NCBI RefSeq assembly: GCF_001194135.2 | Contig: NC_069001.1 | Location: 13,329,987 to 13,363,812, forward strand | Source of the DNA: Octopus bimaculoides | Lineage: Eukaryota | Direction: 5' to 3' | DNA length: 33,826 nt | In this document: positions 19,273 through 19,331 of the stretch, piece by piece | Numbering within the stretch: the first letter of the stretch is position 1 | How the letters are laid out: every line of letters starts with the position of its first letter | The notes under the pieces: generated by a model | What the model saw: the letters and a program-made list of their open reading frames with translations, nothing else | The model's database searches: none | Told to the model about the DNA's origin: nothing | Translations under genes and position numbers: made by a program

Positions 19273-19331
19273 TGCTACTTCAGGCTGATGACGAGCAAAG
19301 ACTCAGAAACATGTCCCTGAATGCAGGCTAG
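19273..19331 (+). ncRNA. Type I hammerhead ribozyme motif with Schistosoma-like tertiary elements
   Basis: TTCAGG/CCTGAA stem I; UAC bulge; CTGATGA 19285-19291; GAG-CAAAGA-CTC; GAAA 19306-19309; palindrome ACATGT; GUC 19313-19315. Confidence 0.85.

What the first reader, a model, noticed from the sequence alone, without database searches (positions are those of the whole stretch)
19273..19331. HHR with Schistosoma-type tertiary geometry and a palindromic stem III
Seen: GC-UAC-UUCAGG CUGAUGA C-GAG-CAAAGA-CUC-A GAA ACAUGU C CCUGAA. Established: the full-length Schistosoma HHR has UAC six bp from the core, a 4-bp stem II and loop CAAAUA. Here the spacing is the same and loop II differs by one base, suggesting retained loop-bulge tertiary contacts. 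Stem III is only the palindrome ACAUGU, the type that cleaves as a dimer. The one defect is a C.A mismatch at 10.1/11.1, which may be CpG decay of a C-G pair (inference).
Basis: partly seen in the sequence, partly recalled or inferred. Interest (0 to 1): 0.85.

Follow-up and report, generated by a model that had tools for sequence, protein, structure and literature searches.

The report
Solo hammerhead ribozyme in repeat relic
The sequence is a real hammerhead self-cleaving RNA motif, but of the standard animal type carried by small retrotransposon-like repeats; here it is a single, aged copy with one flaw next to its catalytic core, so it is an ordinary relic rather than a new kind of ribozyme.

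Summary
It has every invariant hammerhead (HHR) core base, C17 at 19315, a 6-bp helix I with a UAC bulge, loop 2 CAAAGA, and helix III reduced to the palindrome ACAUGU. A relaxed type-I descriptor hits the window once and hit once in 2000 shuffles.

The architecture is not unusual. The literature gives it as the standard "canonical metazoan type-I HHR", which acts as a dimer and sits in ~300-bp non-LTR retrozymes related to Penelope-like elements.

- **Setting:** the HHR caps a long, strand-specific hairpin inside a ~343-nt structured element bounded by (TA)n runs.
- **Second copy:** a diverged partial copy lies at 2689-2868 (-) with no recognisable HHR.
- **Neighbour:** a Penelope-type minimal-HHR-like relic lies 375 nt away on the other strand.
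- **Missing parts:** I saw no tandem partner and no RT ORF.

The C10.1·A11.1 mismatch is real. CpG decay could explain it (window CpG o/e 0.46), but so could a family trait or a bulged-C reading. I could not retrieve HHR-bearing paralogs, so this is undecided.

Verdict: a genuine HHR and a new member of a known kind, most likely an inactive or weakly active solo copy. Low interest.

The parts
19274..19325 (+). Type-I hammerhead motif including the closing stem of helix I (UGC 19273-75 region / GCA 19323-25)
   Evidence: Sequence read. Only descriptor hit in the window. Best Rfam match is Hammerhead_HH9, 20.9 bits, E=0.0018 on a 74-nt search.
19276..19278 (+). UAC bulge ('loop 1') on the 5' strand of helix I, opposite a single U at 19322
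   Evidence: It aligns with UAC of the HH9 consensus.
19279..19284 (+). Helix I 5' strand UUCAGG, pairing with CCUGAA at 19316-19321
   Evidence: 6 contiguous base pairs.
19285..19291 (+). Core box CUGAUGA (C3-A9)
19292..19305 (+). Helix II and loop 2: C10.1, GAG, loop CAAAGA, CUC, A11.1. This gives 3 Watson-Crick pairs plus a basal C·A mismatch.
   Evidence: The mismatch is marked 'v' in the cmscan alignment.
19306..19308 (+). Core G12 A13 A14
19309..19314 (+). Helix III, ACAUGU: A15.1-U16.1 closing the palindromic tetraloop CAUG. It forms a 6-bp intermolecular duplex in a dimer.
   Evidence: The cofold dimer MFE contains the ACAUGU duplex. The double-hammerhead energy is -24.8 kcal/mol.
19315..19315 (+). 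C17, the predicted cleavage site (scission 3' of this base)
   Evidence: Position relative to the core. Cleavage itself was not tested.
19316..19321 (+). Helix I 3' strand CCUGAA
19230..19368 (+). Long imperfect hairpin that extends helix I, with the hammerhead at its tip
   Evidence: Inverted repeat I7. MFE structure. The + strand folds at -63.3 kcal/mol against -49.8 for the - strand, with 6 G·U pairs.
19201..19543 (+). About 343 nt of structured repeat element carrying the hammerhead. GC is 43% against 35% in the flanks.
   Evidence: MFE -130.8 kcal/mol, z = -7.6 against shuffles. GC values. Bounded by TA runs.
19184..19197 (.). (TA)n run abutting the 5' end of the element
19543..19554 (.). 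(TA)n run abutting the 3' end of the element
2689..2868 (-). Second, diverged partial copy of the same element (matches element positions 136-289). It ends in a (TA)n run and has no recognisable hammerhead.
   Evidence: nhmmer E=7.1e-15. Upstream similarity to the hammerhead region is not significant (33 of 500 shuffles reach the score).
19656..19690 (-). Minimal-hammerhead-like relic of the Penelope type: AUUU-CUGAUGA-[A]-GAGC-UCC-GCUC-GAA-ACGU-G-AAAU. Position 17 is G, which is not cleavable.
   Evidence: A post-hoc descriptor gave 0 hits in 2000 shuffles. No Rfam hammerhead match.

Best explanation
The site is a genuine hammerhead ribozyme of the canonical metazoan type-I class (Schistosoma / newt / HH9-like). 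It is carried by a solo, diverged copy of a small non-coding retroelement of about 343 nt.

That element is most likely a non-LTR 'retrozyme' or a non-autonomous derivative of a Penelope-like element. It lies in a (TA)n-microsatellite-rich intergenic stretch of an invertebrate draft genome. The genome is probably a cephalopod's, judged from my recollection of the octopus SINE, which I did not verify.

How elements of this kind work, taken from the literature:
1. A multimeric + strand transcript folds each unit so that the HHR sits at the tip of a long helix I.
2. Helix III is only one A-U pair plus the palindromic loop CAUG, so two HHR copies pair their ACAUGU segments into a double hammerhead.
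3. Each copy cuts 3' of C17 (here 19315), leaving a 2',3'-cyclic phosphate and a 5'-OH.
4. The unit-length RNA is ligated into a circle.
5. The circle is copied back into DNA by a PLE-type reverse transcriptase.

At this locus those steps are inferred, not shown. There is only one copy, no tandem partner, a non-canonical C·A at 10.1/11.1, and a roughly 70%-identical paralog that has lost the motif. The most likely state is therefore a non-functional or at best weakly active relic.
For: - **Core and helices:** complete core and correct three-helix topology at 19274-19321. It is the single descriptor hit, against 1 hit in 2000 shuffles.
- **Rfam:** the best and only ribozyme match is Hammerhead_HH9. 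UAC, CUGAUGA, CAAA-A, GAAAC and GUCC all align.
- **Architecture:** it equals the 'canonical' metazoan HHR described in PMC4209133. Dimer dependence of such helix III is documented in PMC7229834.
- **Element properties:** 343 nt and 43% GC, matching the '~300 bp, GC<45%' given for non-LTR retrozymes (PMC7229834).
- **RNA structure:** strong, with z=-7.6. It is specific to the + strand: -135.1 against -108.6 kcal/mol, with 6 G·U pairs in the hairpin.
- **Repeat family:** a second diverged copy lies at 2689-2868 (-), E=7e-15, also ending in (TA)n. One compensatory change is visible there: GGAAGC/GCUUCC against GGAAAC/GUUUCC.
- **Flanks:** (TA)n on both sides, in line with the microsatellite insertion bias of PLEs (PMC8557442).
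- **Neighbour:** a PLE-type minimal-HHR-like motif on the opposite strand 375 nt away. PMC4209133 reports dual motifs 100-700 bp apart on opposite strands.
- **Solo copies exist elsewhere:** described in bioRxiv 10.64898/2026.07.22.740005.
- **Helix III recurs:** HHRs with the identical helix III (GAAACAUGUC) occur as dispersed and inverted copies in eukaryote-derived (insect-like) metagenome contigs.
Against: - No tandem repeat and no second HHR of the same kind in the window.
- No RT or GIY-YIG ORF in the visible sequence.
- G10.1-C11.1, described as highly conserved (PMC4209133), is replaced by C·A.
- Rfam score is 20.9 against a gathering score of 52. This is weak evidence, because none of the 14 metagenomic HHRs reaches any gathering score either.
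- The element boundaries were drawn from the TA runs. Those runs are very common here: 58 runs in 27 kb.
- The only paralog found does not cover the HHR, so core conservation within the family is untested.
- The source organism was not verified.
Confidence: 0.72

Rival explanations
1. An active member of a living retrozyme family. The C10.1·A11.1 (or bulged C plus extra A) would be the family's normal state. The element would be transcribed, would cleave as a dimer in multimeric RNA or in trans with sister copies, and would circularise. The solo appearance would be due to assembly collapse.
For: - The rest of the core, helix I, the UAC bulge and loop 2 are intact despite CpG depletion.
- The axolotl HHR_Amex2 family (~60,000 copies) has a U·U mismatch at the base of helix II and still self-cleaves, better as a dimer (PMC7229834).
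- The 10.1/11.1 positions covary in cave-cricket satellites (PMC2837043).
- The + strand structure is preserved.
- The assembly has 18 gaps, one of them 200 nt downstream.
Against: - Both flanks of the element are non-repeat sequence, with no adjacent second unit.
- The only paralog is about 70% identical and lacks the motif.
- C at 10.1 removes the purine N7 that helps bind the A9/G10.1 metal ion (established hammerhead biochemistry, from my own knowledge).
Confidence: 0.15
2. The 3' end (pseudo-LTR part) of a 5'-truncated Penelope-like element, rather than a retrozyme. The rest of the PLE cluster, including an inverted copy, would be hidden in or around the 19754-20041 gap.
For: - (TA)n-flanked insertions, an inverted minimal-HHR-like motif 375 nt away, and an assembly gap.
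- T-rich termini at 19557-19600 (-) and 20071-20110 (+) resemble each other.
- PLEs form inverted or tandem insertions that break assemblies, and they prefer microsatellites (PMC8557442).
- pLTRs and retrozymes are phylogenetically related (bioRxiv 10.64898/2026.07.22.740005).
Against: - Metazoan PLEs carry minimal HHRs (longer helix II, short helix I, no loop contacts). Canonical HHRs like this one are assigned to retrozymes (PMC4209133, PMC7229834).
- No RT or endonuclease ORF in the window.
- The similarity of the termini is low-complexity.
Confidence: 0.1
3. A domesticated, single-copy regulatory ribozyme of the host, analogous to the amniote intronic HH9.
For: - The best Rfam match is HH9.
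- It is solo, with an intact core.
Against: - It lies in a repeat with a paralog 16 kb away.
- It sits between microsatellites and SINE fragments, with no coding sequence in 33.8 kb.
- It has a basal mismatch and minimal helix III, whereas HH9 has a stable helix III (consensus).
Confidence: 0.02
4. A chance match to the hammerhead consensus.
For: - It is below every Rfam gathering score.
- Another CTGATGA...GAAAC match at 3334-3375 is a chance by-product of a palindrome.
Against: - 1 hit in 2000 shuffles for the descriptor.
- On top of that come the UAC bulge, loop 2 and the extended helix, which the descriptor does not require.
Confidence: 0.01

Closest known systems
Canonical metazoan type-I hammerheads of non-LTR retrozymes / satellite repeats (Schistosoma Sm-alpha, newt and axolotl satellite 2, coral and mussel retrozymes; PMC7229834, PMC4209133)
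   Same: - Type-I topology with a 6-bp helix I followed by a bulge (UAC).
- 4-position helix II with a 6-nt A-rich loop (CAAAGA against CAAAUA).
- One-pair helix III capped by a palindromic tetraloop, as in axolotl HHR_Amex1, implying action as a dimer.
- Host element about 300-350 nt, GC <45%, highly structured RNA.
   Different: - No tandem array here (solo copy).
- C·A instead of G10.1-C11.1.
- No expression, circRNA or cleavage data.
Rfam Hammerhead_HH9 (RF02275), the conserved intronic hammerhead of amniotes
   Same: It is the best Rfam match (20.9 bits). It shares UAC, CUGAUGA, CAAA-A loop 2, GAAAC and GUCC, with the same spacing.
   Different: - The score is far below the gathering score of 52.
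- HH9 has a 3-bp helix III with a 5-nt loop and a G-C at 10.1/11.1.
- HH9 is a single conserved locus, not a repeat.
Minimal hammerheads of Penelope-like elements (PMC4209133)
   Same: - Palindromic 15.2-16.2 / loop 3 and dimer logic.
- An unpaired nucleotide after A9 is a possible reading of C19292.
- (TA)n-associated, dispersed, often solo or inverted copies.
- The neighbouring motif at 19656-19690 (-) fits this class better than the main motif does.
   Different: - PLE min-HHRs have a 6-8 bp helix II, a 4-5 bp helix I and no loop1-loop2 motif.
- The main motif has the canonical 6/4 geometry with UAC and CAAAGA.
- No PLE ORF is nearby.
Hammerheads in metagenome contigs L001-L012
   Same: Identical CUGAUGA ... 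GAAACAUGUC, that is, the same helix III palindrome and C17, with an A-rich loop 2. They occur as dispersed copies and as inverted pairs 290 nt apart.
   Different: - They have a bulged U after A9, a GGCC/GGCC helix II, a 5-nt loop and a short helix I without UAC.
- There is no similarity outside the ribozyme.

Membership tests
Hammerhead ribozyme (any type) | Invariant core: C3 U4 G5 A6 N7 G8 A9, G12 A13 A14, A15.1-U16.1, H17 | tested here: met
   CUGAUGA at 19285-91, GAA at 19306-08, A19309...U19314, C19315.
Hammerhead ribozyme (any type) | Three helices radiating from the core | tested here: met
   Helix I has 6 bp. Helix II has 3 Watson-Crick pairs plus C·A. Helix III is one pair plus a tetraloop, or 6 bp in a dimer.
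Hammerhead ribozyme (any type) | G10.1-C11.1 pair at the base of helix II (highly conserved, PMC4209133) | tested here: not met
   C19292 lies opposite A19305. An alternative reading keeps G19293-C19304 as 10.1/11.1, with an extra C after A9 and an extra A before G12.
Hammerhead ribozyme (any type) | Reaches an Rfam hammerhead gathering score | tested here: not met
   HH9 scores 20.9 bits against 52. The test is weak for this subclass: 0 of 14 metagenomic short-helix-III HHRs pass either.
Hammerhead ribozyme (any type) | Site-specific self-cleavage 3' of position 17 | not testable with these tools
   Needs a transcription/cleavage assay.
Canonical metazoan type-I HHR (Schistosoma/newt/HH9-like) | Helix I open (type I), 6 bp, then an internal loop or bulge that contacts loop 2 | tested here: met
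   UUCAGG/CCUGAA, then UAC opposite U, then a continuing helix. UAC aligns with HH9.
Canonical metazoan type-I HHR (Schistosoma/newt/HH9-like) | Helix II of 4 bp capped by a 6-nt CAAAUA-like loop | tested here: inconclusive
   The length is 4+6+4 and the loop is CAAAGA (5 of 6 against CAAAUA, 5 of 6 against HH9 CAAAAA). The basal position is a C·A mismatch.
Canonical metazoan type-I HHR (Schistosoma/newt/HH9-like) | Short helix III (1-2 bp) with a small palindromic loop | tested here: met
   A-U closing CAUG; ACAUGU is self-complementary. The dimer model gives -24.8 kcal/mol.
Canonical metazoan type-I HHR (Schistosoma/newt/HH9-like) | Loop 1 - loop 2 tertiary contacts actually form | not testable with these tools
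   Needs a 3D structure, probing, or kinetics at low Mg2+.
Non-LTR retrozyme | Tandem repeats, with at least 2 consecutive units each carrying a type-I HHR | tested here: not met
   One HHR of this kind in the window. No adjacent unit. It would count as a 'solo' monomer in the sense of bioRxiv 10.64898/2026.07.22.740005.
Non-LTR retrozyme | Unit of about 170-400 bp, GC <45%, non-coding, highly structured RNA | tested here: met
   343 nt and 43% GC. No ORF longer than 56 aa. z=-7.6. The + strand is more stable than the - strand.
Non-LTR retrozyme | Multi-copy family in the genome | tested here: inconclusive
   One further diverged partial copy in the window. The source genome is not searchable with these tools.
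Non-LTR retrozyme | Expressed as circular RNA | not testable with these tools
   Needs RNA-seq or a northern blot.
Penelope-like element (pseudo-LTR) | Adjacent ORF with telomerase-like RT and GIY-YIG endonuclease, direct pLTR repeats | tested here: not met
   ORFs of 90 aa or more in the window are all low-complexity or gap artefacts. The 18671-18980 / 20111-20413 repeat does not contain the HHR. A gap at 19754-20041 leaves room for doubt.
Penelope-like element (pseudo-LTR) | Minimal HHR (long helix II, short helix I, extra nucleotide after A9) | tested here: not met
   The main motif has canonical 6/4 geometry. The neighbour at 19656-19690 (-) does fit, apart from G17.

The most novel reading that the evidence does not exclude
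The C10.1·A11.1 base of helix II (or bulged C plus extra A) is the normal, selected state of a cephalopod retrozyme family that still cleaves as a dimer. A protonated C·A+ wobble would then give pH-sensitive activity. That would extend the range of tolerated variation next to the hammerhead core and add cephalopods to the animals with active ribozyme-bearing circRNA elements.
Probability: 0.1. Interest if true: 0.45.

Novelty: new member of a known kind. Interest (0 to 1): 0.2.

Why it matters
The locus adds one more example, apparently from a cephalopod-like genome, to the very large population of type-I hammerheads in animal repeats. It shows the usual fate of such copies: solo, diverged, and with a defect next to the core.

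It would matter more only if a genome-wide census showed a live family with the same C·A. That would bear on how much variation the 10.1/11.1 position and its metal site tolerate in full-length hammerheads. It would also bear on the spread of retrozymes and PLE derivatives in molluscs.

As it stands, the practical value is for annotation. Rfam gathering thresholds miss this class: neither this site nor any of the 14 metagenomic HHRs was detected.

Tried and rejected
**Searches that did not help**
- Rfam at gathering thresholds over the whole window gave only a tRNA-like hit. E-value mode on 1 kb gave no hammerhead because of the filters. Only a 74-nt search exposed HH9.
- To find paralogs through translated ORFs, I searched the 61-aa stop-free stretch next to the HHR against the 5.8-billion-protein set. 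There were no candidates.
- An exact look-up of ten window ORFs, meant to identify the source record, found none in the collection.
- A scan of viral contigs with a canonical-HHR pattern gave 0 hits.
- Literature searches for hammerheads in octopus or cephalopods gave no specific description. The only item was 235 Rfam Hammerhead_1 hits in the giant squid genome. The supplement of PMC7229834 does not mention cephalopods.

**Leads followed and dropped**
- The metagenome scan returned 12 loci, but they belong to unrelated (insect-like) HHR families and share only the ribozyme.
- CTGATGA...GAAAC at 3334-3375 turned out to be one arm of a long palindrome and is not a hammerhead.
- I tested whether copy 2 (2689-2868) keeps a decayed HHR upstream. 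The local alignment score of 30 is not significant: 33 of 500 shuffles reach it. A MAFFT-based two-sequence covariation analysis was unreliable because of misalignment.
- I tested whether the 1440-bp-spaced repeats (18671-18980 and 20111-20413) are LTR-like repeats of the HHR element. The sequence downstream of the second copy is unrelated, so they are not.

Full report
**What is in the sequence.**
- GC 19274-75 and UAC 19276-78;
- UUCAGG 19279-84 and CUGAUGA 19285-91;
- C19292, GAG, loop CAAAGA 19296-301, CUC, A19305;
- GAA 19306-08, ACAUGU 19309-14, C19315, CCUGAA 19316-21.

All invariant hammerhead positions are present: C3-A9, G12-A14, A15.1/U16.1 and H17=C. Helix I has six Watson-Crick pairs. 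Helix II has three, plus a C·A opposition at 10.1/11.1. Helix III can only be a single A-U pair closing the palindromic tetraloop CAUG, or a 6-bp duplex between two copies.

**Is it more than chance?** I wrote a relaxed type-I descriptor: helix I >=5 bp, CUGANGA, helix II >=3 bp with one basal mismatch allowed, GAAA, A15.1...U16.1, H17.
- It finds exactly this site in the window and produced one hit in 2000 dinucleotide-preserving shuffles of the window.
- The bare pattern CTGATGA-N6-30-GAAAC is expected 0.04 times per window.
- Features outside the descriptor also match known hammerheads. Rfam's Hammerhead_HH9 model aligns UAC, the six-pair helix I, CUGAUGA, the CAAA-A loop, GAAAC and GUCC in register (20.9 bits, E=0.0018 in a 74-nt search).

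The score is far below HH9's gathering score of 52, and nothing appears at gathering thresholds. That test says little for this subclass, however. None of 14 short-helix-III hammerheads recovered from metagenome contigs passes any Rfam threshold either.

**Setting.**
- The window is a draft eukaryotic assembly with 18 N gaps (6630 N), 58 (TA)n runs in 27 kb, TG microsatellites and SINE fragments.
- From memory, the SINE fragments resemble the abundant octopus SINE. I could not verify the organism.
- No ORF of 90 aa or more is anything but low complexity or gap artefact.
- The hammerhead sits at the tip of a long imperfect hairpin, 19230-19368 (I7).
- That hairpin lies inside a ~343-nt block, 19201-19543, with 43% GC against 35% in the flanks. 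The block is bounded on both sides by (TA)n runs.
- The block folds far better than shuffles: -130.8 kcal/mol, z=-7.6.
- It folds better on the + strand than on the - strand: -135.1 against -108.6 kcal/mol for the block, and -63.3 against -49.8 for the hairpin, with six G·U pairs. This points to structure at the RNA level in the polarity of the ribozyme.

**Relatives.**
- nhmmer with the block finds a second, diverged copy at 2689-2868 on the - strand. It matches element positions 136-289 with E=7e-15 and ends in a (TA)n run.
- One helix shows a compensatory change between the copies: GGAAGC/GCUUCC against GGAAAC/GUUUCC.
- Upstream of the match there is no recognisable hammerhead. The apparent similarity is not significant, since 33 of 500 shuffles reach its score.
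- The element is therefore a repeat, but the one paralog available says nothing about core conservation.
- Attempts to reach other paralogs failed.
Their hammerheads share CUGAUGA...GAAACAUGUC but have a bulged U after A9, a GGCC/GGCC helix II and short helix I. They show no similarity outside the ribozyme. Two contigs carry inverted pairs 290 nt apart.

**A neighbour.**
- On the - strand, 375 nt downstream, lies AUUU-CUGAUGA-[A]-GAGC-UCC-GCUC-GAA-ACGU-G-AAAU at 19656-19690.
- It has three traits that Cervera and De la Peña list as emergent features of Penelope-like-element (PLE) minimal hammerheads: an extra nucleotide between A9 and 10.1, a G10.1-C11.1 pair, and palindromic 15.2-16.2 (PMC4209133).
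- A descriptor built from those traits gave 0 hits in 2000 shuffles. It was written after seeing the site.
- Position 17 is G, which cannot be cleaved, so it is at best a relic.
- The same paper reports dual motifs 100-700 bp apart on opposite strands.
- This motif lies between a (TA)n run and the 19754-20041 gap. The T-rich ends at 19557-19600 (-) and 20071-20110 (+) resemble each other weakly.

**Comparison with the literature.**
- PMC4209133 says most metazoan hammerheads are type-I motifs with helix I of 6 bp and helix II of 4 bp interacting through conserved loop nucleotides. Helix III has 1-2 bp capped by a small palindromic loop. That makes them inefficient as monomers and active as dimers.
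- PMC7229834 shows that these canonical motifs reside in ~300-bp, low-GC tandem repeats (non-LTR retrozymes). Those repeats are expressed as circular RNAs in a coral, a mussel and the axolotl.
- It also shows that the axolotl HHR_Amex1 has exactly a one-pair helix III with a palindromic tetraloop, and cleaved 6% in one hour as a monomer.
- HHR_Amex2 carries a U·U mismatch at the base of helix II. It still cleaved 22% in one hour and cleaved much more efficiently as a dimer.
- A 2026 preprint (10.64898/2026.07.22.740005) links these elements phylogenetically to PLE pseudo-LTRs and describes solo monomers.
- PLEs show a bias for inserting into microsatellites and form inverted or tandem clusters that break assemblies (PMC8557442).
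- The giant squid genome paper lists 235 Rfam Hammerhead_1 hits (PMC6962438).

**The mismatch.**
- C19292 opposite A19305 is the one departure from the canonical core-adjacent pattern.
CpG o/e is 0.46 in the window against 0.93 for GpC, and the element has 7 CpG where 16 are expected.
- That idea implies an ancestral C-G, which is the reverse of the conserved G-C.
- A second reading treats C19292 as the extra nucleotide after A9 that is typical of PLE hammerheads. G19293-C19304 would then be 10.1/11.1, and A19305 an extra base before G12.
- A third reading is that the mismatch is a family trait like the axolotl U·U. The 10.1/11.1 positions also covary in cave-cricket satellites (PMC2837043).
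- Without HHR-bearing paralogs I cannot choose between these.
- From established hammerhead biochemistry (my own knowledge), losing the purine at 10.1 should weaken the A9/G10.1 metal site, so reduced activity is the default expectation.

**Mechanism and verdict.**
- Thermodynamic modelling shows the domain-swapped double hammerhead is feasible. It gives -24.8 kcal/mol, against -17.6 for two hammerhead-compatible monomers and -23.2 for two monomer MFE folds. The dimer MFE of -28.2 also contains the ACAUGU duplex.
- In a multimeric transcript this motif would be expected to cut 3' of C19315.
- At this locus there is one copy, no partner, a defect next to the core and an old paralog without the motif.
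- I conclude it is a genuine hammerhead of a known kind, in a solo, diverged retrozyme or PLE-derived element, and most likely a relic.
- Cleavage, tertiary contacts, transcription and the family consensus remain untested.
- Interest is low. The only route to something notable is a live family that carries the C·A as its normal state.

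Noticed in passing
window 19656-19690 (- strand): A minimal-hammerhead-like motif of the Penelope-element type: an extra A after A9, a GAGC/GCUC helix II, palindromic ACGU and a 4-bp A/U helix I. It has G at the cleavage position. It lies between a (TA)n run and the 19754-20041 gap.
   Followed up: partly
window 2689-2868 (- strand): A diverged partial copy of the 343-nt hammerhead-bearing element (nhmmer E=7e-15). It ends in a (TA)n run and has no recognisable hammerhead.
   Followed up: yes
window 18671-18980 and 20111-20413 (extending to about 19100 and 20520): Two copies, 78% identical, of a repeat of about 300-400 bp, each starting right after a (TA)n run and spaced 1440 bp apart on either side of the hammerhead region. 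The first copy has an internal partial duplication (18885, 19052). They are not LTRs of the hammerhead element.
   Followed up: partly
window 19557-19600 (-) and 20071-20110 (+): T-rich ends facing outward toward (TA)n runs on both sides of the 288-N gap resemble each other (71% over 58 nt). This may be an inverted pair of truncated retroelement 3' ends or a MITE-like element. The sequence is low complexity, so the evidence is weak.
   Followed up: partly
window 3224-3398: A long near-perfect palindrome (arms of about 62 nt around a short repeat) that runs into the gap at 3400. One arm contains a chance CTGATGA...GAAAC match. It may be a foldback or MITE end.
   Followed up: partly
window 9676-9748 (- strand): A tRNA-like sequence just above the Rfam gathering score (31.8 against 29 bits). 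ARAGORN does not call it. It is probably a SINE head or tRNA pseudogene.
   Followed up: partly
window 17743-17970, 23700-23870, 24969-25147, 1-155, 16622-16808: Several copies and fragments of a SINE-like repeat (GGCGCAGGAGTGGCTGTGTGGTAAG... / ...TTTGTGTGTCTGTGTTTGTCCCCCC...) in both orientations. From memory I recognise it as the abundant octopus SINE, which I did not verify.
   Followed up: no
window 6519-6695 and 7454-7630: A 177-nt inverted repeat, 98% complementary, made of ACC/GGT-rich triplet-like sequence, 758 nt apart and next to assembly gaps.
   Followed up: no
window 10678-10860 and 10981-11100: A near-identical direct duplication spaced 303 bp apart, around a 10-N gap. It may be an assembly artefact or a recent tandem duplication of GGT-rich sequence.
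   Followed up: no
whole window: CpG is strongly depleted (o/e 0.46) while GpC is not (0.93). (TA)n runs are extremely dense: 58 runs of 10 nt or more in 27 kb of non-gap sequence.
   Followed up: yes
L007 4813-5133 and L012 2260-2580 (metagenome contigs): Pairs of identical-type hammerheads (CUGAUGA-U-GGCC-AAAUA-GGCC-GAAACAUGUC) in inverted orientation 290 nt apart, on eukaryote-derived (insect-like) contigs. The same family is dispersed over nine other contigs. None is detected by Rfam at gathering thresholds.
   Followed up: partly
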